Part shown: positions 3,499-63,182 of the stretch, one piece after another
Layout: each line of letters begins with the position of its first letter
Numbering within the stretch: the stretch's first letter is position 1
DNA from: Octopus bimaculoides
Taxonomy: Eukaryota
Assembly (NCBI RefSeq): GCF_001194135.2
Contig: NC_068985.1
Coordinates: 39,918,319-39,982,318, forward strand
Direction of reading: 5' to 3'
DNA length: 64,000 nt
Translations under genes and position numbers: made by a program
Notes under the pieces: model-generated
What the model was told of the DNA's origin: nothing
Databases searched by the model: none
Seen by the model: the letters and a program-made list of their open reading frames with translations, nothing else

Positions 3499-3532
<34 letters not shown>

Positions 3533-4205: not shown

Positions 4206-4929
4206 GGCACCTTTCTTTTTCTTCAGAAATGATGTGAATTTAGTACTGGTTTCTTGTAAAACTGCAACTGCCTTCTGGTCTCTTGTAAAAATGCAACTGC
4301 CTTCATCTCGTCGCTGATCACATTGTAAAATCTTTAGCCAATATCTTTCAGGTTTTTAGAAATTGAAAAGTAAACTAAAAAGAAACCTAAAGTAGTTTCC
4401 CTTGTAAAACACACGCCAAAGTAGCACTGACTATTTTCAATCCTTTCCTCTCCAGATTTAAAATAGTCTGGAATACCCTTCTCATTCACGTTTTTATTAT
4501 AAACATCGATATATAGATGCTCAAATTAAATAAAGTCGAACGGATGCGGTTTAAGAAAGATTTGATAAAGATATCAAGCTTGTTAAGTGACAACATAAAA
4601 GCTCCAATGTTGGTTATTTAGTATATAACTTTCATGTGTCCACTAATCGGTATTCCATTGTCAGTTCGTAAACGATGTTTGTATACGTGTAGAATATATT
4701 CAAAACAACAGAAGACCTTTGAGTAACAACAATTCATGCTTTGGAACTGACTTAGTGATTTGGTTTCCATTTCCGGCTGTCACCACCTCAAACAAATACT
4801 ACGGTCATTTTGCACCGTTGTCACGTGTGTTATTCTAATTTATTAAAGATTTTAATTAATGAAAGACTAGTTGGCTGTGAGTTTGCTCTTGCTAGCATTT
4901 AACTTAACCTTTGATTTGTCCTTTACAGA

Positions 4930-6588: not shown

Positions 6589-6919
6589 AGGCTCCCCCTC
6601 GAGTGCGGAAGCATGAAACAAGATTGTAGTGGCTCCAAAAAACAAGATGGCTACCGATCACCCAGAAGATGTGGCACACGATATGACAACTCAAATATCA
6701 ATACAAAAAGAAATAAACATACACAACAGTTTTTTTGTTTTTTTTACACAAAATGTTCAAGAGTAAAAAAAATGAAATGGGCCAAGAGAAAAAAAATGAA
6801 TGTCAAANNNNNNNNNNNNNNNNNNNNNNNNNNNNNNNGTTGACAAAGGTGCATGTGTAGGTGATGGTGTTGCCAAAGGTGCATATGTAGGCTCAAAGGC
6901 GTGACAGTGGTGTCATCAA

Positions 6920-8667: not shown

Positions 8668-9444
8668 TGCAGGCTATCTTTCGGCAGAAATCTATGATGT
8701 ATTGAGTGAGAGAATCTCATTATTTCATTTGCTAAACAGAGCTGAACAGTCAAACACACACTCGCACGTTGTCATGTACGACTGACGTCACTTACTTATT
8801 CCGAATCGTGTAGAAACACACTGCAAGCTGCCACAGTCAATAAAATATGAATACAGTTTACAAATTTGTTCCTTCTGTGCGGTCCGGTAGTTGGGGACTC
8901 TTGTTTTATATAGTTATCATATCTCACTATGTAGCCATTAAGTCAATGGTAAACGAAGAGATAGACAAAATCAAACGAAATAAATGCGGACAGTGATGAC
9001 TTGTTTCCTTCTTTCTTTCAAATTATAATAATTGCAAGTCTGAATTTAACAAAGATAATTTACTGACGAGAAACAAGTTCTACCAGAAGAAGGGAAAAAA
9101 AACTCCTACATTTAGATTATGTTCCATGAATTACAAAATTTTTCTAACTATATTTGTTAGTCCGATTAGTAAATTGAGTATGAAACAAAAACAGTTACAT
9201 GAACTCAATATTGTAGTGAAGGAAGTACCATTTCAAATATTTGCGTCGTGGTCATACATCACCTTAGCTTATAATTTATATTTCAGTGTTCTATGTTTAA
9301 CGTGGTGGATATGGATATTTAAGGGAAGCAAAGTTCTTATACATTTCGTTTATTAAACTATCAAAGAAAAAATTGGTAATATGCGAGCACTAATACATAA
9401 TATTTACTCTATATATATCTTAATTTGTCCCCTTCATCATGTCT

Positions 9445-9515
9445 GCATCGGTGGTTCAGTGGTAGAATGCTCGCCTGCCACGCGGGCGGCCCGGGTTCGA
9501 TTCCCGGCCGATGCA
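9445..9515 (+). tRNA. tRNA-Gly-GCC: tRNA-Gly (anticodon GCC)
   Basis: 71-nt canonical sequence GCATCGGTGGTTCAGTGGTAGAATGCTCGCCTGCCACGCGGGCGGCCCGGGTTCGATTCCCGGCCGATGCA. Acceptor stem GCATCGG/CCGATGC and intact A and B boxes. Confidence 0.97.
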
Positions 9516-9519
9516 ATTA

Positions 9520-10040: not shown

Positions 10041-10268
10041 ATGGCTGTCCAGTATATTTGCCGATATCCTGGTATCTTGTTAATTTCGGCAAGACCATTG
10101 TTAAACTTTACTCGAACTTTCCTACATAAACGTCAACTGACAAATACGAATTTATCCAAACTTTCCAAGATTTCGTTGACCAATGGCAAAGCTGGGAAAC
10201 TGATGCAAGCCTACGAAGAATTCATTGGTTTGTCTGATGTGAAAGCAGCACAGAGTAAGGTTATTGAA
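10041..10268 (+). CDS. CCDC51: CCDC51 / MITOK mitochondrial potassium channel, coding exon 1 (76 codons, mitochondrial presequence)
   Basis: Acid-free, R/K/S/L-rich N-terminus followed by YEEFIGLSDVKAAQSKVIE (human YEEFVGLNEVREAQGKVTE). Phase-0 donor GAA|GTGAGT at 10268/10269. Confidence 0.9.
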
Positions 10269-12039
10269 GTGAGTCACATAACTTCTGTCCTTTTTCCCGG
10301 TTATTACGCACCTTATCAGATAATTAACTACGTATTCTTCACGTCTATGAATCGCATGAACAGACAGAAACCAAGTTAAACTTTTTTCTCATCTACATGA
10401 AATAATCTACAGAGTTGTCATAATACCTTTTCGTCATTCTGCTGTTAAATTCTAAGGAAGTCGACATTGTATTTCCTTTTTCTTTTCTTTTTCGGGTTCA
10501 GTCGCCTACACAGTAATTGGTTTTGTTCCTTTCTTTTCAACAAAGATCTGACATATTACTTAAATTATCGTGTTCCTAACTTTGATCGGTTGATTTTTTA
10601 AAGTTATCTTTTATTCCGTCTGTATTCACCGCCGGCAGCAGGTTGAGTTAAAATTTAACTTCACTAGTCCCACTCGAAATTGTAGTCCTAGATACAATAT
10701 GACGGGGGGGGGGGAAGAACGATGGGAAGGTCTCGGCTGGAATGTCTCTGATTGTGGATCCGCAGGTTTAGGGATGATCCGGAGCTAATCAATAACATGC
10801 CAAAGGACACCTCTTAGTGATCTCTACATCTACTAGATATAACAGCCAAATCTTCCACATAGCATGTCCTATTTTCAATAAAGAAATGTACATTGGATGA
10901 TGTAGTCCTCGATACACTATCTGAATAAAAGAAAAGATGGAACATCATTGATCATAGGTTATTATTCTTTCCCACACAATTTTTCACTGATCATCCCCTT
11001 CCTGTGCCATCAGTTATCTCTCCCGCTCCTCTGAGCTACATCTTAGACTTGTCATACCTTGTCTTTAACACCTCTCATATCTGCCATCATTCTTTCCAAC
11101 CACTCATATATCTGCCATTGATGTTCCCTCACTGTTGTCACACCACTCACATTATGTATCTCTGACCTCCCTGTCACTATACATCATCTTGCACACCATC
11201 GCCCTATTTTTTTAAATCTATCTTCCTTCCTGAGCCACTTCTTTCTCTCTCACCTTACAATATTTCTTATTGACCATACCTCCACCTTTGTTCATCACTC
11301 TCTATATTCACCACTTCCCTACCCTCTCCTTAACCATCTGTTATTCTTGTCTAACACACTTATGAAATGTTTACGTGTGTGTGTATTAATAAGATATAGT
11401 GGTACAAGAAGGCACCAATCTTTGCTGGAAATAGCAGTCGATAATAATACAACGCTATGTAAAGCTTCACTGAAATATATACTGGTAAAGAAGTATGCAG
11501 GCAGCGAACTTAAAAAGTTTTCGTCTTACCTCAAGGAAGAACATCGTAAAAATGGACAATCCAGAATGGATAATCTAGGACCTGAGTTTCGGACTTTCCA
11601 AAATATGGTTGTTATTGTAAATTTGATTAGTCCTCATCAGCTAGATTCACCTGTGATGAAATTTTAAAATATATATTTCAGTGAAGCTTTACATAATATC
11701 ATATCGTTATTGACTGTTATTTCCAGCAAACATTGGTACCTCTTTGCACCACTATTTCTCATTCTACCTTTACGGTGCTTTATTTGGCCAGAAAGTGATA
11801 CTATTGTATTGCAATTGTTAAAAATTTATGTGGATATATATATAATATCGTCATCATCATTGTTGTTGTTATCAATTTATGTCCACTTTCCATGCTGGCA
11901 TGGGCTGGATGAACTGGAGTAAGTTACCTTTACAGTTTGGTTTCTATACCTGATGCTCTTCTTTAAACGACCTATTGTACAGAGTGTATTGGATGCATTT
12001 TGTCATGGCACAAGTTCTGGAGACTAAAGGGATTATGTG

Positions 12040-13068: not shown

Positions 13069-13974
13069 TCTGAGAAAAATTTTTTGAAAATTCAAGAACA
13101 GCGCCGCCAAAAAAGTCATGAGCTTTTTGAAATTCAAATGAGTCTTCGGAAGATCAATGCTGAGCTGGAGAAGATAAACCGAGCCGATGATAAATACTTG
13201 GCATTGCTAACTCAAGAGCATGCAATCATACAGAGAGAGGCAAACTTAAACAATGATTTAAGCGATCTTGAAAAGCTAGAGAAGGAACATTTCACAGCTC
13301 TATCAATATCAGTACGAGAAAGTCATGAAAAAGAACGTGCTCAATCTGAGAAAACCAAATATTGGTCTGTTATTGGTTCCATTATTGGTGCCTTGCTAGG
13401 TATAATTGGTACAACCATAAACAACAAAATGAGAATGAATGAGTTACGTTCAATTGTGACCAAATCTACTGAAGAGGGGCAACAGCAAAGGGATTTAACA
13501 GAGAAGGTAATTGCTGCTTTAAAGAAACAATTGGCTTCAACAGAGGCTTTCATCTCTGAATTACATGGAGTATTGAAATCAAATGTGTTAACTCCAGCAA
13601 CTCTCTCTAATATGGGAGAACAATTTATTCATTACAATAAGGAACACTCTAAAGATTCAACTGCTGCTTTCTTAACTGGTAGCTCCCAAAAACTGGAGCA
13701 GCAAACTGCAGAGTTATTGACCTGCCTTAAACACCAGGACAAATACCTAACAATTGAACTGGCAGCCATTAAAGAACTCTTACAAAAAACTCATGTGGAT
13801 GTAAACAAAGATGGCATTATCTATATTAACCCTGATATTGATCACCATCTTGAAGATAATAATCGGAAACTGGAACAACGCTTGAAATTGCACTCTTTAG
13901 CAACAGTGACTTTCATTTATGCAGCATTTGCTTTAACTCTGCCTGTACTGTATTCAATCTTTCGAGGGAACTGA
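13069..13974 (+). CDS. CCDC51: CCDC51 / MITOK, coding exon 2 (301 aa + stop; whole protein 377 aa)
   Basis: Acceptor CATCTCTTTTACAG ends at 13068 in phase 0 (SEKNFLKIQE...). Conserved VRESHEKERAQSEKTKYWSVIGSIIGALLGIIG (TM1) and C-terminal TM2 ending TLPVLYSIFRGN*. Candidate AATAAA at 14517-14522. Confidence 0.95.
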   Translation, partial: SEKNFLKIQEQRRQKSHELFEIQMSLRKINAELEKINRADDKYLALLTQEHAIIQREANLNNDLSDLEKLEKEHFTALSISVRESHEKERAQSEKTKYWSVIGSIIGALLGIIGTTINNKMRMNELRSIVTKSTEEGQQQRDLTEKVIAALKKQLASTEAFISELHGVLKSNVLTPATLSNMGEQFIHYNKEHSKDSTAAFLTGSSQKLEQQTAELLTCLKHQDKYLTIELAAIKELLQKTHVDVNKDGIIYINPDIDHHLEDNNRKLEQRLKLHSLATVTFIYAAFALTLPVLYSIFRGN

Positions 13975-17910: not shown

Positions 17911-18004
17911 GCAGTGGTGGTGGAAAACATTATAGCCTCACCACACCCCACTCCTTCCTTAAACATAAACAGTTTATAATTAGAATTCTCAAGATTGCTA
18001 CATA

Positions 18005-18380
18005 TACTCTTTTACTTGTTTCAGTCATTTGACTGCGGCCATGCTGGAGCACCGCCTTTTAGTCTAGTAAATCAACCCCAGGACTTATTCTTTGTAAGCC
18101 TAGTACTTATTCTATCGGTCTCTTTTGCTGAACTGCTAAGTTACGGGGACGTAAACACACCAGTATCGGTTGTCAAGCGATGTTGGGGGGACAAACATAT
18201 ACACACACATACATATATATATACATATATACGACGGGCTTCTTTCAGTTTCCGTTTACCAAATCCACTCACAAGGCTTTGGTCGGCCCGAGGCTATAGT
18301 AGAAGACACTTGCCCAAGGTGCCATGCAGTGGGACTGAACCCGGAACCATGTGGTTGGTAAGCAAGCTACTTAGCACACT
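18005..18380 (-). mobile_element. tRNA-derived SINE, family A (CORE-like CCTTGGGCAAGT box, internal TA/TG microsatellite)
   Basis: Near full-length reverse copy of the family also seen at 25940, 39972, 44827 and 61375. Confidence 0.85.
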
Positions 18381-20161: not shown

Positions 20162-20304
20162 TAGAATATGAGAGGTTTAGTTCACTGGTGATCTAAATGA
20201 ATAGGTACACTGTGTAGATGCTATAACTGGTCATCCCTTAGATTCCAAGTTCACAGCTGAGACTGGAGCTAGGGATCCGTAGTAGCCTTCTGAGTTAGCA
20301 GGTA

Positions 20305-20523
20305 TATATTTGTGTGTGTGTGTGTGTGTTTGTCCCCTCCCCTACCATCGCTTGACAGCCAATGTTGGTGTGTTTATGTCCCCTATTACTTAGTGGTTCG
20401 GCCAAAGAGACTAATAGAATAATCACCAGGCTTACAAAGAATAAGTTCAGGGGTTGATTTCTTCAACTAAAAGGTGGTGCTCCATCATGGCCACAGTCAA
20501 ATGACTGAAACAAATAAAAGAAT
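20305..20523 (+). mobile_element. SINE family A, 3' half
   Basis: CATCGCTTGACA..GGTGTGTTTA..GGCTTACAAAGAATAAG..AAATGACTGAAACAA tail. Confidence 0.75.
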
Positions 20524-20895
20524 GTATGGTGCTACTATGATATATACCTTACTATTTGTGACCTACCATAAAAGCTCTCTACCAAACAACTCACTTATGA
20601 TCTTCAGCAATTAATCAACCTCCGAAATCAGAGGATTCTGAGGCAGAACTTATAAGAAGAACCATGGGGTATGCATAGATGGCCTCTCCCTTATTAAATT
20701 TTGCTAATCTATCTCCAGTAAAATTTTATTGTAAGCTATTTATATTGATACAACAGCTGGAGAATCTAATAATTTTATTTTATGATAAAAACATTACAAG
20801 TAATACCATGTTATAAAATGAATAGGATATATAATCCAACTATTTTGTCAATCCGGTATTGTCATATTTTATGTTAGTTATTCCTAGTCATCATA

Positions 20896-21150: not shown

Positions 21151-21724
21151 GGTTCTTTTTTAAAACGGGGGCCACATTTTTCATTAATGTTTTACGTAGT
21201 GTTTTTGGTACCGAAAGACTTTCAAACTTCGTATACTTATCTATTTTGTGTTATAGAACAGAAAAATACTTTTGTATTCGAATTTATTTCATGTAAAAAA
21301 TTGTCTTATTTCGATAATTTCAACCATTCACTGACAAGTATTCAGTTGTTTACATTTACTCCTTTGGCTCATTAAGCGATGTAAAGCGTATTTAATCTCC
21401 ATACCTTCGTTTTATTTGCTTTTTTCATTTTAAATTTGCTTTAACCCTAACCCTAACCCTAGGGTTAGGGTTAGGGTTAGGGTTAATTGTTTCAGAATCG
21501 TTTGTTTATGTAGTCGGCACTTAATGTATATCGGCTGAATGGACGTCAGTGATTGGTTGAAATTACAGAAATACGACAACTTTAACATGGAATAATTTAT
21601 GGATTTCTTTTTTTTTAAAGAAGACTAAGAGAAAAAGATGTTTTATATGACACATTCTACCAGTGTTCCAAGTTTCAAAGTGTTTCGTTAATGAAAAATG
21701 TGGCCCCCGTTTTAAAAAAGATCC
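21151..21724. mobile_element. non-autonomous DNA transposon (MITE), Merlin-type, 574 bp
   Basis: TIRs of about 37 bp, GG(T/A)TCTTTTTTAAAACGGGGGCCACATTTTTCATTAA. Perfect 8-bp TSD CAATTTAG at 21143-21150 and 21725-21732. 5'-GG termini with an 8-bp TSD are Merlin (IS1016/IS1595-related) hallmarks. Confidence 0.85.
21441..21486. repeat. inverted telomeric-repeat palindrome (CCCTAA)n(TTAGGG)n inside the MITE
   Basis: TTAACCCTAACCCTAACCCT|AGGGTTAGGGTTAGGGTTAGGGTTAA. 21442-21479 is a perfect 38-bp palindrome. Confidence 0.95.
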
Positions 21725-25939: not shown

Positions 25940-26252
25940 TAGGTGCAGGAGTGGCTGTCTGGTAAGAAGCTTGCTTCCCAACTACATGGTTTTGGGTTCA
26001 GTCCTACTGTGTGGAACCTTGGGCAAGTATCTTCTACTATACCCTTGGGCCAACCAAAGCCTCATGGGTGGATTTGGTAGATGGAAACTGAAAGAAACCT
26101 GTCATGTGTGTGTGTGTGTGTATGTGTGTGTTTGTGTGTCTTTGTTTGTTCTCCCCACCATCACTTGACAACTGATGTTGGTGTGTTTTCGTCCCCATAA
26201 CATAGTGGTTCGGCAAAAGAGACCAACAGACTAAGTACTAGGCTTACAAAGA
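25940..26252 (+). mobile_element. SINE family A, 3'-truncated, CpG-decayed
   Basis: TAGGTGCAGGAGTGGCTGTCTGGTAAGAAGCTTGC head and CCTTGGGCAAGT box. Confidence 0.8.
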
Positions 26253-27559
26253 ACCACATTCAATAGCCCATTCTTCCATTCCAGTTTCAATAAATGAAAT
26301 TGTTTTATATCATATGAGTATCAAACTTAATAAAGTACTTCCTCATACTCTTGAGAATTAGTGTAGATATGAGGTCAAGTGGAATTCATATTATAGCCAT
26401 TGTTGATTGGGTTAATAAAGACTTCAGTAGTCAACTGTTGTACTTCAGTATATCTTGCTAGTCAATTAACACATAGCAAACATAGAGAGTATCTGAGGTT
26501 ATTTAAGGGAGTGGATTATGCCTGGGGTGGGGGACTGATTGAACTTTAGTTAGAGTAAGGTCTGTCAGCACTAATTCTTATGTCATTCAGCTCCACAAAA
26601 TTTCAAACATAATAAGTGAAGCATACTGTACTTAGTCTCAGTGTTTCGTGTTTCATAGCATGAAATGATTGAGGGAATTTATCTGTTTCTGACAACCAAG
26701 ATAACAATGCCACTTCATTACAGCCTGAAGGTTACCCAACTGTGAAATCAAATTATCCAACACAAAAGAAAAGAAGGAAAACCCATCCACCCACTCACAA
26801 TGGTGTATAAAAATAGTTGGAAATTTATGAAAAAAAAAAAAGGAAAAGAATAACAAAAAGTATAAAACAGAGCTTTACTTGTTGGCTTGTTTTGATGACA
26901 CCTGTTGTCATCGATGGTTGAGTTTAACCCTTTAGCATTCAGATTACTCTGTCAAATGTAATACTTACAAATGTTTTGAGTTAATCATGCATAATTTTGT
27001 ACTTTTGAGATTTTGATGATAGGATTGTTTACTTTTAGCTTAAAATTGTAGAGTAGGTGGCATAAGAGAGCACATTTGACCAGTTTGAACATAAAACAGA
27101 ATATTTTAGCTGGATATGGTCAGTTTAAATGCTAAAAAGTTAAAGTATATACTGGTTTAATTCTGTTATAAACCGATGTCCCTATCTAAGAAATGAGTGA
27201 CAGATGTCTTCTCAAAACAAAACCATTCTGCATTGTGAAAGTTTAGCTAAGCTATTAGACATCGATGAGGAAGTCATGGCCTTTGAAGCCCGTAATTGTT
27301 GCCTTCTGAAAGAAGTTTGTCTTTTGCATTTAAAAACAAAATCATTCTTGTTGATTACATAGTAGTATATATATTCTGTTAGCCTGTTGGTCGACAGTCT
27401 TAGAACATCGGATAGAATGTATTGCAACGTTTTTTCTAGATCTCTGCATTCTGTGTTCAAATCCTGTCAAGGTCAGCCTTGCCCTTAATCCTTTCAAGGT
27501 TGAATAATAAAGTACCACCCTAGTGCTGGTACAGCCCTCTCACCTACCTGTCACATTCT

Positions 27560-39971: not shown

Positions 39972-40126
39972 CAGGTGTAGCTGTGTGGTAAGAAAATTGC
40001 TTGCCAACTACATGATCTTGGTTTCAGTCCTGCTGTGTGGCACTTTGGACATATGCCGTCTACTATACTCTCAGGCCAACCAAAGCCTTGTGATTGGATT
40101 GGTAAATAGAAACTGAAAGAAACCTG

Positions 40127-40162
<36 letters not shown>

Positions 40163-40405
40163 ATGTGTGCGTGTGTGTTTGTGCTTTTGTGTCTGTGTTT
40201 GTCCCCTACCACCATTTCACAACCGGTGTTGGTGTGTTTACATCTTTACATCCCTGCAACCTAGTAGTTCAGCAAAAGGTATTGATAGAATAAGTACTAG
40301 GGTTAAAAGAAAAAGAAAGTATTGGGGTCATTTCATTCAGTTAAAAATTTTTCAAGGCGGTACCCCAGGATGGCCATAGTCTAATGACTGGAACAACTAA
40401 AGATA
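39972..40405 (+). mobile_element. SINE family A, diverged
   Basis: GCTGTGTGGTAAGAA head, (TG)n centre, AGAATAAGTACTAGG and ATGGCC..AATGACTG tail. Confidence 0.75.
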
Positions 40406-40656
40406 CCAGATACATATTTAGATCAGTTCAAATACTACTATATNNNNNNNNNNNNNNNNNNNNNNNNNNNNNNNNNNNNNNNNNNNNNNNNNNNNNNNNN
40501 NNNNNNNNNNNNNNNNNNNNNNNNNNNNNNNNNNNNNNNNNNNNNNNNNNNNTATATATATATATTTATATATATATATATTTATATACATATATATATA
40601 TATATGCACCAGCATGACCGCAGCCACTTGGCTGAAACACATAAATAAATAAATAA

Positions 40657-44335: not shown

Positions 44336-44826
44336 TATTCTTCTTTAGATGACTAGTCTTCTTCACAGATCACCACCAGTGTTGACACAACATGTTAGTT
44401 TAGATAAATAACTTCAAAGATCTCTGAGACACATACCCCTCTCTCTTACTCAGTCTATCTGCTTGCCTGCCTGCTTGTCTGCCTGTCCAACTGTCTCTTT
44501 CTCTCAGGTCAGACATGATCCAGCAGGTTATGATCAAATTTTTAGGGAGCTCTTTTAAGATAGTAGGATGTGATTTAAGGAAGATTTGGTTGTTATTTCT
44601 AACTGGTTGAACTTTGGCATAGAAATTGCCTTGTTGGCTTCCTTTAGTTATATTATGTTATATATAAATATATTATATCACACACACACACACACACACC
44701 TGCGGACTTAATGTCTTGTCAACCTTAAAACTTTTTAGTTTGTCTGGAAACTGATTTCCTTACAAAATAAATAAATATATTAAAAAAATGAAATAGATAA
44801 AAATAGAATAAATTAAATGCAACAAT

Positions 44827-45198
44827 AAGCTTGCTCCCAACCACATGGTTCCAGGTTCAGTCGCACTGCATGGCACCTTGGGCAAGTGTCTTCTACTATA
44901 GCCCCAGGCCGACCAAAGCTTTGTGAGTGGATTTGGCAGACGTAAACTGAAAGAAGCTCGCTGTATATATGTATATATATATGTATATGTTTGTGTGTCT
45001 GTGTTTGTCCCCTCATCTTTGCTTGACAACCGATATTGGTGTGTTTACATCCCTGTAACTTAGCAGTTACGCAAAAGAAACCGATAGGATAAGTACTAGG
45101 CTTACAAAGAATAAGTAAGTCCTGGGGATGATTCCTAAAGGTGGTGCTCCAGCATGGCTGCAGTCAAGTGACCAAAACAAATAAAAGAATAAAAGAAC
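44827..45198 (+). mobile_element. SINE family A
   Basis: AAGCTTGCTCCCAACCACATGGTTCC...TGGCACCTTGGGCAAGT...AAATAAAAGAATAAAAGAA. Confidence 0.85.
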
Positions 45199-49124: not shown

Positions 49125-49420
49125 CATCATCATCGTTTAACGTCCGCTTTCCATGCTAGCATGGGTTGGACGATTTGACTGAGGACTGGTGAAACCGGAT
49201 GGCAACACCAGGCTCCAGTCTGATTTGGCAGAGTTTCTACAGCTGGATGCCCTTCCTAACGCCAACCACTCAGAGAGTGTAGTGGGTGCTTTTACGTGTC
49301 ACCCGCACGAAAACGGCCACGCTCGAAATGGTGTCTTTTATGTGCCACCCGCACAAGCCAGTCCAGGGGCACTGGCAACGATCTCGCTCGAAAATCCTAC
49401 AGGAGCCAGTCAGGCGGTAC
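49125..49420 (-). mobile_element. RTE LINE 3' UTR with (GAT)n tail
   Basis: Reverse complement of 62602-62923, beginning CATCATCATCGTTTAACGTCC. Confidence 0.8.
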
Positions 49421-54700: not shown

Positions 54701-55884
54701 ACTAAGCCATACAAAGAGAGATTCACCATAAACATCAAACAATTTAGGTAAGTTCCTCACCCCTCAAATAAATGTCAATGATGATGAACAATAAGATAGA
54801 AGATAGTTTTCCACATTATCCCAATAACTCTCATTCCACTCAACAGACAGTAGTCAATATCGCTTGTGGTTGAACATCATGGTAAACGTTCTCACTCTCT
54901 ATAAAAGTACATCACTCATGCTGAGTGTGTGTGTGTTAGGAATTTCATTTGATAATAGTGATTTTGTAAAAGGTATTTTTTTTTCTTTTAGTTCCAGCTC
55001 AGAAATGCGACCATGCTGGGGCACCACAATTGTAAAAAATGATTTATTTTAATACTATACTTTTCTGTCAGTAAATGTTTTTTCTTACACACACACGGAC
55101 TTGATTGAAGCAGGGTGGGGGTTAAAAATTTGAATTACAAATTTTTTGTTGTTGTTGCTTAAATCTCCACACTGGACCATTGCATCATTCCATAAAATGT
55201 TTGTGGGGAGAAAAATATTGAAAAAACATCAATATATGTCAGAGTGACAAAGAAATGAGAAAGGTATCAAGTAGTCGCAGGATGTGCTACAAACAACAGC
55301 CAAACCTCTTCTCCCTTAAATCATATACTTTTTCATCCCAAAATTATTTTGAAATTATAAACAGAAACAAATTGCAGATTCAGACTGTCCATATTTTAAA
55401 ACTATGATTAAAAAACATTTTGGAATAAAGCCAAAATTTTAGGATTTATGGAGGGGATATTAAATGATGATGATGATGTATGTATGTATATACATGCATG
55501 CATGCATACATACATACATACAAGTGTGTGTGCTATTAAATGACTCTTCGACAATGTTCATATGTGTGCGTGTCCCTGTTATAATGAATGGCAGAAAAAA
55601 AATCTGCAGAACAGTATTTTTGCTTGTATATTAGGTATAGACAACTTTTTCTAAGAAGCAGGCACACAAGACATGGCTCATCATCTGGTGGTCCACCCTA
55701 CTAAAAATTCAAGGTAATTTTTCGTTAGGTGTACTATTCCGAAAGTAACAAGGGCCACAGGTTAACTGATATTTGTCATGGTGCTAATGCAAGTATTTCT
55801 TTATATGTAACCAAAACTCCAAGTGAACTTTTGGATTATGATAAAATCAAAATATTATCTTTAAAAAAAAAATGAAATGTTAAT

Positions 55885-56297
55885 GGATCTATTTTAAAAC
55901 GGGGGCCACATTTTTCATTAATGTTTTACGTAGTGTTTTTGGTACGGAAAGACTTTCAAACTTCGTGTACTTATCTATTTTGTGTTATAGAAGAGAAAAA
56001 TATTTTTGTATTCGAATTTATTTCATGTAAAAAATTGTCTTATTTCGATAATTTCAACCAATCACTGACAAGTATTCAGTTGTTTATATTTACTCCTTTG
56101 GCTGATTAAGCGATGTAAAGCGTATTTAATGAAATTACAGAAATACGACAACTTTAAAATGGAATAATTTATGGATTTCTTTTTTTTTTTAAGAAGACTA
56201 AGAGAAAAAGATGTTTTATATGACACATTCTACCAGTGTTCCAAGTTTCAAAGTGTTTCGTTAATGAAAAATGTGGCCCCCGTTTTAAAAAAGATCC
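55885..56297. mobile_element. second copy of the Merlin-type MITE, 413 bp, lacking about 162 bp of centre
   Basis: Same TIRs as 21151-21724 and roughly 97% identical by eye. Own perfect 8-bp TSD ATGTTAAT at 55877-55884 and 56298-56305. Confidence 0.88.
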
Positions 56298-57599
56298 ATG
56301 TTAATATATTTAAATAAAAGTGTTGCTTTTATTTTTCGATTTCAACACCATTTTTGAATAAAACCCATAGCTCACTTTCTACGGTTTCATTCACTGCGGT
56401 TAACTTCTTTCTTATTTCCTGTCTCCATCCTTAAGTACAGACACATGCATTTCTCTCATCAGTTATGTTGTTTTTGTAATTTTACTTTTAAACAAACGAA
56501 GGAAATATTTTTCACGTATAACAAGGCGACCAACTCGAAGTACATTTCATTATTTCTTTCGATTTTTGTTATAAAACGTTCTAAGTTATTTTACTAATTT
56601 TTCGCTTTCGCTTCAACTTATTCGATTCTTAAAAGTTAGAAAATGATACATTTGCAATTTATCCTTTCTTTCTCTCTTTCTTTATGGGAAGAAAAGAGTA
56701 CTTCAGTTTCCTCTTTATTTTTCATCTTTTACTTGTTTCGGCACGGCAATGTTTCGAGGGGACAAACACAAAGACATGCACACAAGAAGCTCGTAGTATA
56801 TATATAATATATATATATACCTCTGGCTTCTTTCAGTTTCCGTCTACCAATTCCACCCACATGGCTTTATACACACACGCAATACATGTAAAATATACAT
56901 AAAACAAACTTGTATCACACACATAAGCATTCATTAAAGCATTGCATCATTTTATATAAAATAGGAACCAAAAAAGATGACCAAAACAACAAACTACGTG
57001 AGATTATTGATTGCTTATACTAGCACAAGGCCAAAACTTTTCCGGGAAGGGGGCAGTCGATTATAAATCGATACCAATACCTTACTGGTACTTTATTCTA
57101 TCGACACCAGGTTGCTGAAAAGCTAAATCAACCTCACTGCAGACCAAAACTTTATACGTGTGATACTCTAACGATTTTTCAAATAAACTACACAAGAAAA
57201 TAATTTCAAGCGGTTCAAAATTTCAAATCCTACTAGATCAACTTGGTTTTTCCTCCCATCCCGTTGGAATTTACAGATGCATTCGATTCAAAAATTAGCT
57301 TTGTACACAGCTAAATTACTAAAGGCATGATTTATAATTTATTACTAAATTTTGCATTATTTTAACTAAATTGGAATTTTTAAACTTTTAATTATCCTCT
57401 TTTCGTGAAGTTTGACTGTAATTATTTTTCTATTTTTTTCTTAACCTATTAAGTTTTCAATTCGGTTTTTAAAAAATCACATTAAAGAACTTCTCCCAAT
57501 TCCTTGTAGGATTATTGTTTTGCATGATATAAGATTCTTTTTATTTTTTAATTCCACTTCACATGAATAAAAAAAATGATGTGTGTGTGTATGGTGTTA

Positions 57600-58020
57600 T
57601 GTAGTCCATCCACATGCAAGAAATAGTAGCTAAATCTCCCAAATTACGTCCACCCATCTTACAAAAGGACATACTGGATAAGGTAGTTTCGAGTGCATTG
57701 TCTGAGAAGGGGACGAGAAGGTCATTATTGGAATGCCTTTGATCAAGTCTGCTCGAACTCGACAACACGGTAAAAATTGTCACGAGTGATAAATGTGATA
57801 CGTGCTCGATAGCTGCTCATACGCAAGCAGTCGTCTCCCTCGAACTAACGGGTCGCTAGACTTCCTAGAAATAGCAGCCAAATCTCTCATCACATCTTAG
57901 AAAAGGACACATGAGATAATGAAGTTTGAGATACTTTGTTTGAATAAAGAAGTAAAGGTGATCCTTATCTTTGATCATTGGTCTGCTCCATCAGAGCTGA
58001 CTGACCGAGGCTAAACAAGA
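57600..58020. repeat. two tandem degenerate copies of an abundant interspersed repeat (AGAAATAGCAGCCAAATCT...CCTTTGATCA family)
   Basis: Same motif recurs at about 10830-10960, 38330-38560, 44500-44640, 47040-47150, 49880-49960, 55270-55330 and 63890-64000. Confidence 0.55.
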
Positions 58021-58298
58021 CACGCGCAAAATTTTGTCATTACATATAACCACTAACATAAACACAGGGTCACAACGTTAGGCGGGAGCGGGGTATAGAC
58101 ACTTTAATCAACCACAGTATGTGACTGGTACTTGTTTTACCGCTTTTGAAAGATTGAAAAGTAAAGCGGGCCCTAGTCAGAATTTGAATGAAAATTACCC
58201 TGCTACACACCACAAAGCAGTTTTGTCCGACGCTCTTCGGATTCTTCTGATCACTCATTACAAACAAGAAGAAAATGTACTTACCACCATAGATAGCG

Positions 58299-59759
58299 TT
58301 AATGATATTTAGCTAAGAAATTCATATGGAATTCTTTAAAACGGATGACAGTTTTATTAAATTCTTCTTCGGGTGGCAATATAGTGATGCGAAAATGATG
58401 TGTACCCGCGCGTTGACCAAACCCACTTCCAGGGATTACACAAATGCCAGTGTTTTCTAGCAGTTCATAACAATAGAAACTGTCTGGAGTCATGTTTCTC
58501 TGCTTTGCTTGAGTTATGGCCTTCTCTGGTATGTCGATGCGTGGAAAACAATACATTGCCCCTTGTACTTCGTTGCACGTAAAACCTTGGATGGATTTGA
58601 ACATGTCGGTGACTAGGCGAGCTTTCTTCTGAAGCTGGCGGAGTACAAAAGTTTTCTCTTCCATAAAAAGATCATAAGAAGGTTCACCTTTGACAGGCGG
58701 GTTAACCACCGCTGCGATGGCAATTTGACCCATAAGAGGCGGACAAAGACGGGCTGTGATGCTTTTCAAAATCACTTTCTTCGCATCAGGGTCAATGTTA
58801 GTTAATTCACAGTAGCCACCTCGGAAGCCACATTCTCCCATGTATCCTTTTGATGCTGACATGAAAGAAGCTAACTCTACATTGCTGTATTCGGGACCCA
58901 TTTCTGTGAGGACTTTTTTGAATGAATGAAACTCTACTCCATCTGTGTATATATTATGTTGATAGACTTCGTCTGCTAAAATAAACAATTTCTCCTGGTT
59001 AGCAAATTTAATGATATCGCAAATGTTTTCTTTAGTTAATACTTGACCAGTTGGATTTCCCGGGTTAATTACACAAATGGCCCGTGGCTGGCAGTGTGAT
59101 TTTGCATTGTTGTAAGCAGCTCCAACTTCTTTTAGGTTCAAAGCCCAGTTATTGTCTTCATCGAGGTAGTAGTAAATAGGATACGCGTTATATTCTGTTA
59201 TTGTTGCTGAATAAAGAGGATACTGAGGAACTGGTATCATGACACCTGCTCTCTTTTTCCCGGGTTCTCCAGTCATTAACATATTCAAAATAATTTTTAT
59301 ACCATCACTAGCACCAGTTGTCATAATGATGTCGTCAAGAGAGGCCGAGCAACCATCCCTAGCTTCGATATAACTCGCTACATCTTCTCGAATAACTCGA
59401 AGCCCTTCGCTGTTCGAGTAAGATCCGACACTTTTTCCACGACAATCATTCAGAATTCGGTTTGCCCGTTCTTTACAATCACTCGGGATGTTAGGATCGT
59501 CCATAAGATATTCAGGATATAAACACAATGCCATTAATTGCCGTATGAATGTTATTGGTTTTTGTCCCGTGGCATGACAGTCCCCTATGTTGGATTTGAC
59601 GATTTTCTCAAATGGGTAGCTGTTGTTTCCTTTTCGCAAATCTAATTCTATTTCGTTAGCTCGCATCACAATTGGTCCCCTCACAGCATATTCCATTGCT
59701 CTTAAGTAAGGATTTATAGTATCCATTCTCAAAACCTTTTGATTTTCTTCTTTACTCAT
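58299..59759 (-). CDS. GPT: alanine aminotransferase (PLP fold type I), intronless, 486 aa
   Basis: Uninterrupted ORF with MEYAVRGPI, NIGDCH..GQ, GSYS, PQYPLYS, NPGNPTGQV, ADEVYQ, SASKGYMGECGFRGG (PLP lysine K304 at 58848-58850), QGAMY and HFRITILP. In-frame TAA lies 11 codons upstream of the ATG. Confidence 0.97.
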   Translation of the reverse strand: MSKEENQKVLRMDTINPYLRAMEYAVRGPIVMRANEIELDLRKGNNSYPFEKIVKSNIGDCHATGQKPITFIRQLMALCLYPEYLMDDPNIPSDCKERANRILNDCRGKSVGSYSNSEGLRVIREDVASYIEARDGCSASLDDIIMTTGASDGIKIILNMLMTGEPGKKRAGVMIPVPQYPLYSATITEYNAYPIYYYLDEDNNWALNLKEVGAAYNNAKSHCQPRAICVINPGNPTGQVLTKENICDIIKFANQEKLFILADEVYQHNIYTDGVEFHSFKKVLTEMGPEYSNVELASFMSASKGYMGECGFRGGYCELTNIDPDAKKVILKSITARLCPPLMGQIAIAAVVNPPVKGEPSYDLFMEEKTFVLRQLQKKARLVTDMFKSIQGFTCNEVQGAMYCFPRIDIPEKAITQAKQRNMTPDSFYCYELLENTGICVIPGSGFGQRAGTHHFRITILPPEEEFNKTVIRFKEFHMNFLAKYH

Positions 59760-60274
59760 CTTTGCTGGATTTGTTTTCCCAACTACTATTTAGTTATAAT
59801 AAACCGAAATACGGAGGCTTGTTTGTTTATATATTTCTTCGGTAGCTGATGGTTTCTTCGCTAGCAGATGATTGATAACTTAGTCTTCTTCACTCGTAAG
59901 TAGCAGTCGAAATACAAGTTCCTTCCAAAGACAGTGTAATTTTCGGCTAATAGCCGCAATTTTATCAAACACGAAACGGTTTGTCACGTAAGATAGCTGA
60001 AATGAATGTTTGAGTTGCTCCTCCAATGTAAATAAGCCATCCGAGTGAAGCCCACCCTACACCTTCTTTGTTGGCATTAATGTCCTCTCCTTCCTTCCTT
60101 TTTTAATGCTTAATGAATATTCCTCTGCACATATTCCATACAGACTTTTATACATGACTGATATTATGAATGTGTGAGTTACAGTCTCCTTACTCTCTCC
60201 TCTTTTCTCCCAACTTGCTACATATCAAGACGCTGACTAGTATATGTGTGTCAATATGAATATGTGTGTCTGTG

Positions 60275-60282
60275 TTTTATAG
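60275..60282 (-). promoter_or_regulatory. candidate TATA box (CTATAAAA) about 520 bp upstream of the ALT start codon
   Basis: Consensus match in CpG-retaining upstream DNA. Such motifs also arise by chance in AT-rich sequence. Confidence 0.25.
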
Positions 60283-60815
60283 CTGTTTATCAGCGTGTAT
60301 ATATATATATACGTGTAACAAAATTTAGATCAGCGACCGACCACATGACAGTTACAAGCAACATACATGAGTTAGCATATAATGTAAATTGAAATACATG
60401 CTAATTGCACAAACTGCAATATGAGTGTGTGTGTGTGTGTGTACCTGTAATTACAACTGAAAATTTTCACCGTTGTTACTCCTACGTATGTATGTGTGTA
60501 TATACGGCCGACTGGTTAAAGCAGTTCGCTTCTGAATCATGAGGTGCCATGCAGTGGGGGTATTTTAGCAAATAATCTTTAAGTGAAATCTTTATGGATG
60601 GAAACTCTGTTAGACCATTCATTGAAAGGATTGTATCTCATAATTCAAAGTATCAACAATATTACTGTGTTACGCGGATTCGGTTTGAAGTACAAGTGTT
60701 TGTAAAAATGCTCGCTACTTACACTGCATTGTTAATAGGACATCTGGAATACTCATCGTCGAAACCGACAGAGATCCATTTACTTTTTACTGTGTGCATT
60801 ATATGTATATGCGTT

Positions 60816-60847
<32 letters not shown>

Positions 60848-61193
60848 GTATGTGTGTGTGTGTGTGTACATACGCTGTCACACCATGGCCTTGCTTGGTT
60901 CGGTTGTATTTAATCTAAATATTGTGTTTGAGTTTATACAAACAAGAACCATTGTTTTGTTATTGTTTTAATGTGTATGTATTTCCCTGTATGTTTAAGT
61001 GTAACGTCGCCTTTTTGTTTGTTGCTTAGCACACTCAAGAGCGTCGCAAAAAATGCTTTGCGGTAGTTACAGCCTCTGATGTTTTGAGTTCAATTCCCAC
61101 CTAGGTCGATTTCACGTTTCAGCTTTCTCGATAAAATAAAAAGTATTAGGGTTGATAGAATCGACTGTTTCCTTCCTTTTTGTACCTATTTAC

Positions 61194-61231
<38 letters not shown>

Positions 61232-61374
61232 CTCTCTCCCCTCTCTCCTCTCCCCCTTCTCTCTATATATNNNNNNNNNNCTCTCTCTCTCCCTTCTCTC
61301 TCTCTCCCTCTCTCCCCCTCTCTCCTCTCCCCCTTCTCTCTATATATATGTATGCATGTATATATATGTATGTT

Positions 61375-61672
61375 TTAAGAAGCTTGCTTCTCACCCACAT
61401 GGTTCCAGGTTCAGTCCCACTGCATGGATTTGGTTGGCAAAAACTGAAAGAAGCCTGTCCTATATATGTGTGTGTGTGTTTATGTTTGTTCCCCAGCACT
61501 GTTTGACAACCAGTGTTGGTGTGTTTACATCCCCCGTAAATTAGCAGTTCAACAAAAGACACTGATAGAATAAGTACTAGGTTTTAAAAAAGATAAATCC
61601 TGGGGTGGATTTGTTCAAGGCACTGCCCCAGTATGGCTGCATTCAACTGACTGAAACAAGTAAAAGATAAGA
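61375..61672 (+). mobile_element. SINE family A with internal deletion
   Basis: AAGAAGCTTGCTTC..CCACATGGTTCC...AAACAAGTAAAAGA. The CORE-like box is missing. Confidence 0.8.
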
Positions 61673-61708
61673 GATATGTATATGTGTGTGTGTATGTGTA
61701 TATATATA

Positions 61709-62207: not shown

Positions 62208-63182
62208 TGTTCTTGCTTAGCTGTAAGGACTAAACCCTGACTGAGCAGCTCTATGACCTAAGCTGTTTCAGCAAGGAGGTAGGTTGTGATTTTTTTTTGG
62301 GGGGGGGGAGCAAGCGCCTAGATGCTTTCTCATTGCATACAGGTATAGTAGATTGAATTGACCTTCAGTGTAAAGCAGGTGCATACTTTTTATTTCCCCC
62401 AGAGACATGAAAGACATCAATTCCTGGCAAAACTGTACTCAAACCATAAAGAATTAAAATGAAATATTTCAAAATCTTTTTATTATGGATACGAAACTCC
62501 TTCATTGGACACGAAACTCAGCTTGCGAAGNNNNNNNNNNNNNNNNNNNNNNNNNNNNNNNNNNNNNNNNNNNNNNNNNNNNNNNNNNNNNNNNNNNNNN
62601 NGCACTTGTGCCCGCAGCATGTGTAAGGACTTTCGAGCGAGATCGTTGCCAGTGCCCCTGGACTGGCTCTTGTGCGGGTGGCACATAAAATACACCATTT
62701 TGAGCGTGGCCGTTGCCAGTAGCGCCTGACTGGCCTTCATGCCGGTGACATGTAAAAGCACCCACTACACTCTCGGAGTGGTTGGCGTTAGGAAGGGCAT
62801 CCAACTGTAGAAACTCTGCCAAATCAGATTGGAGCTTGGTGTAGCCATCGGGTTTCACCAGTCCTCAGTCAAATCATCCAACCCATGCTAGCATGGAAAG
62901 CGGACGTTAAACGATGATGATGATTCTACTGTTTCTAACTCTCTATCACCCTTTCATAGACTATACATACATATATGTAATGTGTTTGTGTATGTGTGTG
63001 TTATATATAAATATATATGTACCCAGCATAAGCTAAGGACACATAAGAGGTGCAGCAATATCAGAGGTGTTTGCTCCCTCAAAAAAAAAACAAAAAAACA
63101 TCACAACCTACCTGCTTGCTGAAACAGCTTAGGTCATAGCGCTGCTCAGTCAAGGTTTAGTCCTTACAGCTAAGTAAGAACA
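62208..63182. repeat. inverted repeat pair of about 115 bp (62208-62319 / 63065-63182)
   Basis: TGTTCTTGCTTAGCTGTAAGGACTAAACC...AGGTAGGTTGTGAT and its reverse complement, about 4 mismatches in the first 82 bp. Confidence 0.85.
62602..62923 (+). mobile_element. RTE LINE 3' UTR with (GAT)n tail
   Basis: Ends GCGGACGTTAAACGATGATGATGAT. Paralog of 49125-49420. 5' side in N gap. Confidence 0.8.

What the first reader, a model, noticed from the sequence alone, without database searches (positions are those of the whole stretch)
58299..59759. Intact, intronless alanine aminotransferase: probable functional retrogene
Seen: a 1461-bp ORF with no intron, stop or frameshift, all PLP-binding motifs including K304, and no N-terminal presequence. 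Known: animal ALT genes are normally multi-exon (human GPT has 11 exons), and cephalopods rely heavily on amino-acid metabolism. Inference: an mRNA-derived copy kept by selection, probably cytosolic. Its high CpG retention suggests low germline methylation and restricted expression.
Basis: partly seen in the sequence, partly recalled or inferred. Interest (0 to 1): 0.7.

Follow-up and report, generated by a model that had tools for sequence, protein, structure and literature searches.

The report
Ancient intronless mollusc alanine aminotransferase gene
This is a real, intact, already-annotated single-exon alanine aminotransferase gene of Octopus bimaculoides, but its lack of introns is not an octopus novelty: snails, limpets, abalone and scallops have the same intronless gene, so any mRNA-copying event that made it happened before these mollusc classes diverged.

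Summary
Window 58299..59759 (minus strand) is an uninterrupted 486-codon ORF for a full-length alanine aminotransferase (ALT). It hits human GPT2 at E 4e-190, has the PLP lysine at K304, and lacks a presequence. CpG o/e is 0.83 against 0.42 for the window.

The window is Octopus bimaculoides chromosome CM046605.1, and the protein is already in NCBI/UniRef.

The retrogene reading is only partly right. Octopus does have a second ALT with 12 coding exons over 64 kb, unlinked and carrying a presequence. But the intronless gene belongs to an old paralogue clade (bootstrap 81) shared by cephalopods, gastropods and bivalves. I verified single-exon orthologues in O. vulgaris, Argonauta, an unidentified cephalopod-like contig, Haliotis, Patella and a scallop. 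Mya and Littorina each have two introns. None of these four matches any of the 12 positions mapped in the multi-exon clade, most of which are shared by at least two of Octopus, Haliotis and Lingula.

The most economical history is one retroposition before these three classes split, followed by retention as the presequence-less ALT. The cytosolic location is inferred. No poly(A) or target-site scars remain.

Purifying selection is clear: dN/dS is 0.26 and 0.14, and 144 of 146 near-invariant residues are kept. Expression was not tested. This is ordinary as a gene and of modest interest as evolution.

The parts
58299..59759 (-). Complete single-exon coding sequence (486 codons plus TAA) of the short, presequence-less ALT paralogue ('clade A') of Octopus bimaculoides
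   Evidence: ORF. Pfam PF00155. Full-length match to human GPT2 (3ihj, E 4e-190). The exact protein is called as a gene of range 1461 bp on GCA_001194135.2 CM046605.1. It is present in NCBI/UniRef as P0126.
58848..58850 (-). Codon AAA for Lys304, the PLP (Schiff-base) lysine in the motif S-A-S-K-G-Y-M-G-E-C-G
   Evidence: Position computed and codon read. The column is invariant in the 27-sequence clade-A alignment (K304). It aligns with the SKGYMGECG motif of human GPT2.
59790..59792 (-). In-frame TAA 11 codons upstream of the ATG, which fixes the N-terminus within this exon so that no presequence is encoded upstream in frame
   Evidence: Upstream in-frame translation '...*IVVGKTNPAK' followed by M; sequence.
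55760..61260 (.). CpG-retaining domain of about 5.5 kb (inferred to be unmethylated in the germline) covering the gene, about 1.5 kb upstream and about 2.5 kb downstream; the probable extent of the transcription unit (inferred)
   Evidence: CpG o/e in 500-bp windows is 0.54-1.4 from L001 8501 to 14000, against 0.05-0.35 outside. Converted with window = 69760 - L001 coordinate. ORF 0.83 against window 0.415.
60077..60131 (-). Short upstream block that is still alignable with the Argonauta hians orthologous locus; candidate promoter or 5'UTR element (inferred only)
   Evidence: blastn L001 9629-9683 against L004 4721-4771: 80% over 55 bp, E 9e-6. It is the only non-coding match near the gene.
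57540..57552 (-). Candidate polyadenylation signals (overlapping AATAAA/ATTAAA-type hexamers at +747 and +754 after the stop; another at +191, window 58103..58108); not validated
   Evidence: Hexamer scan. No transcript data were available.

Best explanation
The ORF is the Octopus bimaculoides member of an old, mollusc-wide ALT paralogue, which I call clade A. It is a PLP-dependent class-I aminotransferase that interconverts alanine + 2-oxoglutarate and pyruvate + glutamate.

Clade A proteins are about 485 aa long and lack the basic N-terminal extension. They are therefore most likely the cytosolic isozyme. The unlinked clade B gene has 12 coding exons in Octopus and its product carries a mitochondrial-type presequence.

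The clade A ancestor was already intronless before cephalopods, gastropods and bivalves diverged. The simplest origin is a single retroposition of a processed ALT mRNA that was 5'-truncated or came from a short isoform. The copy was then kept because it took over the cytosolic role. A few lineages (Mya, Littorina) later gained introns at new positions.

Shown here: the identity and intactness of the enzyme, the intronless structure in seven taxa, the multi-exon paralogue, the clade structure, the non-coincidence of intron positions, and purifying selection.

Inferred: retroposition as the mechanism, the cytosolic location, and low germline methylation.
For: Identity and intactness:
- (K304).
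- 144 of 146 near-invariant columns are kept.

Organism and annotation:
-.

Intronless orthologues, each verified as one uninterrupted ORF that translates to the database protein:
- O. vulgaris, Argonauta hians and an unidentified cephalopod-like ENA contig.
- Haliotis rubra and Patella vulgata.
- Ylistrum balloti.

Multi-exon clade B:
- Octopus P0099 has 11 introns.
- Eight of these positions and phases are shared with Haliotis asinina.
- Lingula shares four positions with Octopus and a twelfth, 456(2), with Haliotis.

Clade A introns:
- Mya at 53(0) and 114(2), Littorina at 325(0) and 379(0), in window numbering.
- None coincides with the 12 clade-B positions, and the two species share none with each other.

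Phylogeny:
- NJ bootstraps are clade A 81, its cephalopod part 92, bivalve part 94 and gastropod part 79.
- Clade-specific HMMs separate held-out sequences into an A-like and a B-like/outgroup group, with four sequences falling between them.

Linkage:
- A and B lie on different scaffolds or chromosomes in three Octopus species, Littorina, Pinctada and Mactra, judged from contig lengths.

N-termini:
- All 20 clade A proteins examined have 15-36 non-basic residues before MEYAVRG.
- Most clade B proteins have 38-68 basic, acid-poor residues, often with an internal Met near the point where clade A starts.

Selection:
- dN/dS is 0.26 (dS 0.087) against O. vulgaris and 0.14 against Argonauta.
Against: - No retroposition scar survives. 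There is no A-run of 8 or more within 2 kb downstream of the stop, and target-site duplications were not searched for, because without a poly(A) relic the ends of an insertion cannot be placed. At this age none is expected, so the mechanism rests on parsimony only.
- A DNA duplication followed by loss of all introns would give the same end state.
- Deep nodes of the tree are unresolved (bootstraps 1-54). Whether clade A arose on the mollusc or conchiferan stem, or earlier, is not settled.
- The one chiton with named proteins shows only clade B. This could reflect a later origin, a loss, or limited sampling.
- UTR introns cannot be excluded without transcripts.
- Subcellular location and activity were not measured.
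- The gene evolves about twice as fast as its paralogue over the same species pair: 5.3% against 2.3% amino-acid difference. Some relaxation or specialisation is therefore possible.
Confidence: 0.72

Rival explanations
1. A recent, cephalopod-specific functional retrogene: an mRNA of the octopus multi-exon ALT was retroposed within cephalopods and kept by selection.
For: The gene is intronless next to a 12-exon paralogue in the same genus. It has high CpG content and no presequence.
Against: The ORF is only 61% identical to the octopus multi-exon gene. That is no closer than to ALTs of brachiopods or bivalves. It groups with intronless genes of gastropods and bivalves (bootstrap 81), not with octopus clade B. 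Haliotis, Patella and scallop orthologues are intronless too.
Confidence: 0.04
2. An ancient DNA-based duplicate that lost all of its introns, for example by recombination with reverse-transcribed cDNA at its own locus, before the conchiferan radiation. On this reading no retroposed copy was inserted at a new site.
For: The end state is identical to that of a retrogene. No poly(A) relic is present to prove retroposition. The presequence-coding part could have been lost by ordinary 5' truncation.
Against: It needs 11-12 independent or concerted intron losses on one stem branch, while the sister paralogue kept essentially all of them for the same length of time in Octopus, Haliotis and Lingula. 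The two paralogues are unlinked wherever this could be checked. Introns now present in clade A are at new positions, so no ancestral intron is retained anywhere among the nine clade-A genes examined.
Confidence: 0.18
3. An artefact or foreign sequence: cDNA or other contamination in the assembly, or horizontal transfer from an intron-poor organism.
For: An intronless eukaryotic metabolic gene in an assembly with many gaps could in principle be a contaminant.
Against: The locus lies in chromosome-scale assemblies of O. bimaculoides, O. vulgaris and O. sinensis. Its flanks are colinear at about 89.5% identity over more than 10 kb. It is embedded in octopus interspersed repeats. The protein is a typical metazoan ALT; its best solved-structure match is human GPT2 (E 4e-190), against E 1e-30 for the best bacterial ALT.
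Confidence: 0.01
4. A decaying or non-functional retrocopy that happens still to be open.
For: It evolves about 2.3 times faster at the protein level than its paralogue between O. bimaculoides and O. vulgaris. No expression data were obtained.
Against: Intact orthologous ORFs persist across three mollusc classes. dN/dS is 0.14-0.26, while flanking DNA diverges at the neutral rate. 144 of 146 near-invariant residues, including the PLP lysine, are kept.
Confidence: 0.02

Closest known systems
Human GPT2 / GPT (alanine aminotransferase 2 and 1; PDB 3ihj), class-I PLP aminotransferases, Pfam PF00155
   Same: The alignment is end to end (E 4e-190). It shows the same PLP-lysine motif SKGYMGECG, and the GNPTG, DEVYQ and HFRxTILPP motifs. 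As in vertebrates, there is one paralogue with an N-terminal extension and one without.
   Different: The vertebrate genes are multi-exon (general knowledge: GPT has about 11 exons). No named vertebrate sequence falls inside clade A and the frog model P0144 scores B-like, so the molluscan short/long pair appears to have arisen independently of GPT/GPT2. The molluscan short form is intronless.
Octopus 'alanine aminotransferase 1' (XP_029646883.1, O. sinensis; split models XP_014785109.2 and XP_014770513.1 in O. bimaculoides), molluscan clade B
   Same: Same enzyme family, 61% identical over 478 residues, and present in the same genomes.
   Different: 12 coding exons over 64 kb against one exon. 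It has a 36-residue longer, basic N-terminus. It lies on a different chromosome. Its CDS has a lower CpG o/e, 0.58 against 0.83, and it evolves more slowly.
Annotated clade A orthologues: 'alanine aminotransferase 2-like' of O. vulgaris (CAI9722469.1), O. sinensis (XP_029636175.1), Argonauta hians, Haliotis rubra, Patella vulgata, Ylistrum balloti
   Same: Same length class (482-500 aa), same short N-terminus and the same single-exon coding region. Identity is 95% to 63%.
   Different: Nothing of substance: the window gene is simply the O. bimaculoides member. Mya arenaria and Littorina saxatilis differ in having two lineage-specific introns each.
Described ancient or replacement retrogenes and intronless gene families in lophotrochozoans, e.g. 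amphioxus SYCP1 retrogene replacement (PMC5803294), intronless nAChR expansions in molluscs (PMC6896357), abalone TSSK1-like (PMC6905558)
   Same: A single-exon functional copy of an ancestrally multi-exon gene, retained over long periods. Later intron gain has been reported in such genes.
   Different: These are different gene families. In this case the parental-type gene is retained alongside, so it is not a replacement. No paper among my six literature searches on ALT, retrogenes or intronless mollusc genes describes the ALT case.

Membership tests
Alanine aminotransferase (EC 2.6.1.2; class-I PLP aminotransferase, subgroup with human GPT/GPT2) | Aminotransferase class I/II fold domain | tested here: met
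   Pfam PF00155, E 9.6e-38, residues 95-465.
Alanine aminotransferase (EC 2.6.1.2; class-I PLP aminotransferase, subgroup with human GPT/GPT2) | Full-length similarity to experimentally characterised ALT, closer than to other aminotransferases | tested here: met
   Human GPT2 3ihj E 4e-190 and barley ALT 3tcm E 7e-133. The next classes (AlaA, AspAT, TyrAT, ACC synthase) score E 1e-30 or weaker.
Alanine aminotransferase (EC 2.6.1.2; class-I PLP aminotransferase, subgroup with human GPT/GPT2) | Schiff-base lysine and family-invariant residues present | tested here: met
   K304 in SASKGYMGECG. 144 of 146 columns that are >=97% conserved are kept, and the two differences are V->L and V->I.
Alanine aminotransferase (EC 2.6.1.2; class-I PLP aminotransferase, subgroup with human GPT/GPT2) | Catalyses alanine + 2-oxoglutarate <-> pyruvate + glutamate | not testable with these tools
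   Needs an enzyme assay of the recombinant protein.
Functional retrogene (retroposed, expressed, selected copy of a multi-exon parent) | Coding region lacks all introns that the parental-type gene has | tested here: met
   One ORF against 11 introns in octopus clade B. Most of the 12 mapped clade-B positions are shared by at least two of Octopus, Haliotis and Lingula.
Functional retrogene (retroposed, expressed, selected copy of a multi-exon parent) | Intron-containing parental-type gene at an unlinked locus in the same genome | tested here: met
   The O. bimaculoides clade B models lie on a 57.4-Mb scaffold, while the window's chromosome is 127.5 Mb. It is a distant paralogue, not a recent parent.
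Functional retrogene (retroposed, expressed, selected copy of a multi-exon parent) | Retroposition scars: 3' poly(A) tract and flanking target-site duplications | tested here: not met
   No A-run of 8 or more in the 2 kb downstream of the stop. Target-site duplications were not searched for, because without a poly(A) relic the ends of an insertion cannot be placed. Scars are expected to be erased if the event predates the class-level divergence, so this test is uninformative rather than contradictory.
Functional retrogene (retroposed, expressed, selected copy of a multi-exon parent) | Purifying selection on the copy | tested here: met
   NG86 dN/dS is 0.26 (O. vulgaris) and 0.14 (Argonauta), with flanks at the neutral level of about 10% divergence. 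The ORF is retained across three classes.
Functional retrogene (retroposed, expressed, selected copy of a multi-exon parent) | Transcribed | not testable with these tools
   No transcript data could be tied to the locus. ALT was not found in the held supplementary files of Macchi et al. 2022. Logan contigs of 2-3 kb carrying close orthologues may be transcripts, but for an intronless gene they cannot be told apart from genomic contigs.
Lineage-specific (cephalopod) retrogene | Intronless copy restricted to the lineage, and nested within that lineage's parental clade | tested here: not met
   Intronless orthologues exist in Haliotis, Patella and Ylistrum. Clade A is separate from octopus clade B.

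The most novel reading that the evidence does not exclude
Molluscs, or at least conchiferans, obtained their dedicated cytosolic ALT by a single retroposition before the class-level radiation. The retroposed mRNA was a short or 5'-truncated form of an ancestrally dual-targeted ALT transcript. This would be a route to the cytosolic/mitochondrial enzyme pair that is independent of the vertebrate GPT/GPT2 duplication. The gene then stayed intronless in most lineages while a few (Mya, Littorina) gained new introns. That makes it a dated natural series for studying intron gain and the long-term fate of retrogenes.
Probability: 0.5. Interest if true: 0.4.

Novelty: new member of a known kind. Interest (0 to 1): 0.3.

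Why it matters
As a gene it is ordinary. It is an annotated housekeeping-type metabolic enzyme, and nothing about its sequence suggests a new activity.

The correction does matter for how this kind of finding is read. An intronless gene beside a multi-exon paralogue is not evidence of a recent or lineage-specific retrogene until the orthologues are checked. In this case the intronless state is shared across mollusc classes.

The wider pattern has modest evolutionary interest:
- One paralogue kept most of its mapped introns at the same positions in Octopus, Haliotis and, where mapped, Lingula. The other had none and gained a few new ones.
- This looks like a case of subfunctionalisation by loss of a targeting peptide.
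- It gives a usable system for dating intron gains.

Alanine is a major osmolyte and an anaerobic end product in molluscs (general knowledge). Which ALT isozyme serves which role is therefore a sensible physiological question, but it is not a long-standing puzzle.

Tried and rejected
1. Retroposition scars. I scanned 2 kb downstream of the stop for A-runs and poly(A) signals. Only generic AATAAA hexamers were found and no poly(A) relic. Target-site duplications were not pursued, because without a poly(A) relic the ends of an insertion cannot be placed.

2. Flank conservation to delimit UTRs or a promoter. O. bimaculoides and O. vulgaris flanks are uniformly about 89.5% identical, which is neutral and uninformative. 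Only one 55-bp block aligns with Argonauta.

3. The idea that the Mya introns are retained ancestral introns, which would have argued for stepwise 3'-biased intron loss. Rejected: they map to window residues 53(0) and 114(2), against clade-B positions 43(0), 74(0) and 111(1).

4. A scorpion protein (P0010) that ranked among clade A hits and joined clade A weakly in the NJ tree (bootstrap 54). It is a gene model with an internally duplicated segment and scores neutrally on the clade A and B HMMs, so it is not evidence for clade A outside molluscs.

5. Expression evidence. The held supplementary files of Macchi et al. 2022 contain no ALT entry.

6. Literature. Six of my seven literature searches looked for a description of an intronless or retrogene ALT in molluscs or cephalopods and found none.

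7. Pfam scan of neighbouring ORFs. Only a retroelement integrase was identified, and the 296-aa ORF at 13084..13974 had no significant family.

8. The identity of the ENA contig L005 (ERZ21867824) could not be established. It is treated only as 'cephalopod-like, sister to the octopod genes' (bootstrap 92).

9. Structure prediction was not run, because a solved structure matching end to end already exists.
Full report
**1. The observation**

Window 58299..59759 holds, on the minus strand, an ATG-to-TAA ORF of 1461 bp (486 aa) with no interruption. Apart from frames that run through N gaps, it is by far the longest ORF in the 64-kb window.

It carries Pfam PF00155 (E 1e-37). It aligns end to end with human alanine aminotransferase 2, PDB 3ihj (E 4e-190). 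Barley ALT follows (E 7e-133), and all other aminotransferase classes score E 1e-30 or weaker.

Its codon is at 58848..58850. Among 146 alignment columns that are >=97% conserved in 118 other ALTs, the window protein differs at two, conservatively (V75L, V442I). That is the same count as for other bona fide ALTs.

An in-frame TAA lies 11 codons upstream of the ATG. CpG o/e is 0.83 in the ORF and 0.80-0.85 in the adjacent kilobases, against 0.415 for the window. The CpG-rich domain runs from about 55760 to about 61260.

**2. Where the window comes from**

The exact protein is called on Octopus bimaculoides assembly GCA_001194135.2, chromosome CM046605.1, at about 39.97 Mb, as a gene whose whole range is 1461 bp. 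It is present in NCBI/UniRef as P0126. Its 90% cluster holds 'alanine aminotransferase 2(-like)' of O. vulgaris and O. sinensis.

The locus is real. Its flanks are colinear with O. vulgaris over more than 10 kb at about 89.5% identity, and the region is full of octopus interspersed repeats. Contamination or an assembly artefact is excluded.

**3. The multi-exon paralogue**

Octopus has a second ALT, 'alanine aminotransferase 1' (P0099, O. sinensis, 520 aa, 61% identical to the window protein). It spans 64 kb and has 12 coding exons and 11 GT-AG introns.

O. bimaculoides has it too, as two partial RefSeq models on a 57.4-Mb scaffold, which is not the window's chromosome.

**4. The intronless state is not a cephalopod feature**

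Two trees were built:
- a midpoint-rooted NJ tree of 119 ALTs;
- a bootstrapped NJ tree of 59 sequences, rooted on the human sequence in the output because the three intended outgroups did not group together.

Both show two molluscan groups.

Clade A has bootstrap 81. Its cephalopod part has 92, its bivalve part 94 and its gastropod part 79. It contains the window gene together with about 485-aa proteins of gastropods and bivalves.

The second group, which I call clade B, contains the octopus 12-exon gene, a chiton, and the longer gastropod and bivalve proteins. It is not a supported clade in the bootstrapped tree. The brachiopod, annelid and nemertean ALTs fall outside clade A and score B-like on the clade HMMs. 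Clade-specific HMMs split held-out sequences into an A-like group (A minus B of +30 to +79) and a B-like/outgroup group (-15 and below). Four sequences (P0061, P0142, P0010, P0017) fall between the two groups.

I fetched the loci of clade A members and checked each one by direct translation. These are single uninterrupted ORFs:
- O. vulgaris, Argonauta hians and an unidentified cephalopod-like ENA contig;
- Haliotis rubra and Patella vulgata;
- the scallop Ylistrum balloti.

Two clade A genes have introns:
- Mya arenaria, two introns, after residues 50 (phase 0) and 110 (phase 2);
- Littorina saxatilis, two introns, after residues 326 (phase 0) and 380 (phase 0).

**5. Intron positions**

On one alignment, in window-residue numbering, the clade B introns sit at 43(0), 74(0), 111(1), 155(0), 194(0), 237(1), 264(0), 308(2), 345(0), 367(0), 419(0) and 456(2).

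Sharing among the three mapped genes:
- Octopus and Haliotis asinina share the first eight positions.
- Lingula shares 111, 155, 367 and 419 with Octopus.
- Lingula shares 456 with Haliotis.
- 345 was mapped only in Octopus.

The Haliotis and Lingula maps are incomplete. These are old introns.

The four clade A introns map to 53(0), 114(2), 325(0) and 379(0). None coincides with a clade B intron, and Mya and Littorina share none with each other.

The simplest reading is that the clade A ancestor had no introns at all, and that a few lineages gained new ones. I had considered that the 5'-located Mya introns might be ancestral leftovers of a 3'-biased intron loss. The mapping rejects that idea.

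**6. Mechanism and function**

One branch lost all 11-12 introns while its sister paralogue kept them in Octopus, Haliotis and Lingula. This is most economically explained by a single retroposition of a processed mRNA before cephalopods, gastropods and bivalves diverged.

Two further observations are consistent with this:
- The A and B loci are on different chromosomes or scaffolds wherever this can be judged from contig lengths: three Octopus species, Littorina, Pinctada and Mactra.
- Clade A lacks the 5' part of the coding region.

All 20 clade A proteins examined have 15-36 ordinary residues before MEYAVRG. Most clade B proteins have 38-68 basic, acid-poor residues of the MLR/MFR type. Several clade B proteins also have an internal Met close to where clade A begins. 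I infer the following chain:
- Clade B is mitochondrial or dual-targeted.
- Clade A is the cytosolic isozyme.
- The retrocopy derived from a 5'-truncated or short-isoform mRNA.

These steps are inference; nothing here measures localisation.

No poly(A) relic remains, as expected at this age. Target-site duplications were not searched for. A DNA duplication followed by complete intron loss therefore cannot be excluded, and I give it about 0.18.

**7. Selection**

Nei-Gojobori dN/dS is 0.26 against O. vulgaris (dN 0.023, dS 0.087). It is 0.14 against Argonauta, where dS of 1.2 is close to saturation. The neutral flank divergence of about 10% matches dS.

The protein diverges about 2.3 times faster than its clade B paralogue over the same species pair: 26 of 486 residues against 11 of 475. 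Retention of an intact ORF in three classes is the strongest argument for function.

**8. CpG and expression**

The CpG retention is real and extends over about 5.5 kb around the gene. The clade B CDS has a lower o/e of 0.58.

Macchi et al. 2022 (PMC9476566) report for O. bimaculoides:
- fewer than 10% of CpGs are methylated;
- methylation sits on the bodies of constitutively and highly expressed genes;
- unmethylated genes are shorter and silent, lowly expressed or variably expressed.

'Restricted expression' is a statistical expectation only, and I could not test it.

**9. Taxonomic breadth and literature**

A profile search with the clade A alignment returned named clade A members only from gastropods, bivalves and cephalopods. 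The chiton Liolophura appears only in clade B. A scorpion model that ranked high is an internally duplicated gene model and scores neutrally between the clades.

Six of my seven literature searches looked for an account of an intronless or retroposed molluscan ALT and found none. Comparable intronless families in molluscs have been described for other genes (PMC6896357, PMC6905558).

**10. Verdict**

This is an intact, selected, already-annotated single-exon ALT gene. 'Retrogene' is probably right as the ultimate origin but wrong in its implied age and lineage. The gene is the octopus member of an ancient mollusc-wide intronless paralogue.

It is ordinary as a gene and of modest interest as gene-structure evolution. 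Interest 0.3.

Noticed in passing
window 9444..9516 (+): A tRNA-Gly(GCC) gene (Rfam RF00005, 66.7 bits; ARAGORN). It is the only Rfam match above gathering score in the window.
   Followed up: partly
window 6986..7816 (-): A 276-aa ORF with an integrase core domain (Pfam rve, E 6e-10). It is a fragment of an LTR-type retroelement in a locally GC-richer stretch (GC 0.44 at 6-8 kb).
   Followed up: partly
window 13084..13974 (+) and 10041..10379 (+): A 296-aa uninterrupted ORF that appears, by eye, to be rich in coiled-coil-like sequence and to have hydrophobic segments. An upstream 112-aa ORF lies on the same strand. Neither has a significant Pfam family. This is possibly a neighbouring protein-coding gene and was not identified.
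   Followed up: no
window 18001..18379, 20303..20528, 25946..26253, 39972..40412, 44824..45196, 61425..61676: At least six copies, in both orientations and 68-86% identical, of a SINE-like interspersed repeat of about 220-400 bp. One copy lies about 1.7 kb upstream of the ALT start codon.
   Followed up: no
window 21151..21724 vs 55885..56297: Two segments that are 96-98% identical. The first copy is interrupted by about 160 bp. This is much younger than the other repeats, and the second copy lies about 2 kb downstream of the ALT stop codon, inside the CpG-rich domain.
   Followed up: no
window 49125..49398 (+) and 62626..62922 (-): An inverted pair of repeat copies (88% identical) that brackets the ALT gene at about 9 kb and about 3 kb. 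Both contain a similar ORF starting MKPDG(N/Y)T(R/K)LQSDLAEFLQLDALPNANHSESVVGAFTCH. They are probably copies of one transposable element, with no Pfam hit.
   Followed up: no
window 58278..58283 (-): A consensus splice-donor hexamer GTAAGT lies 16 nt after the ALT stop codon. A 3'-UTR intron is possible but cannot be tested without transcripts.
   Followed up: no
L011 (Haliotis asinina clade-B ALT locus) 6843..7334: The 3' end of one coding exon (residues 206-219) is repeated seven times in tandem with a 62-nt period. Each copy could offer a splice donor, and the annotated model uses the last one.
   Followed up: no
L007 (Mya arenaria) 2151..2539 and 2723..3030; L010 (Littorina saxatilis) 1979..3764 and 3928..4752: Two lineage-specific GT-AG introns in each of two otherwise intronless-type (clade A) ALT genes, at positions not used in the multi-exon paralogue. 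They are candidate intron gains.
   Followed up: partly
proteins P0103/P0141 (Bradybaena similaris, same 81.5-Mb contig); Babylonia P0047/P0065; Nucella P0022/P0062; Potamilus P0057/P0101: Several gastropods and unionid bivalves have two clade A (short-type) ALT copies. The Bradybaena pair has adjacent locus tags on one contig. Clade A has therefore duplicated further in some lineages.
   Followed up: no
proteins P0121 and P0123 (O. bimaculoides): The multi-exon ALT of O. bimaculoides is split into two partial RefSeq models (147 aa and 329 aa) on the same scaffold. This is probably an annotation or assembly-gap problem.
   Followed up: no
proteins P0010 (Centruroides), P0017 (Phthorimaea), P0144 (Phyllobates): ALT gene models of 650-744 aa that contain internally repeated ALT segments, up to nine copies of HMM region 343-400 in the moth. 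These are likely annotation or assembly artefacts that inflate their search scores.
   Followed up: partly
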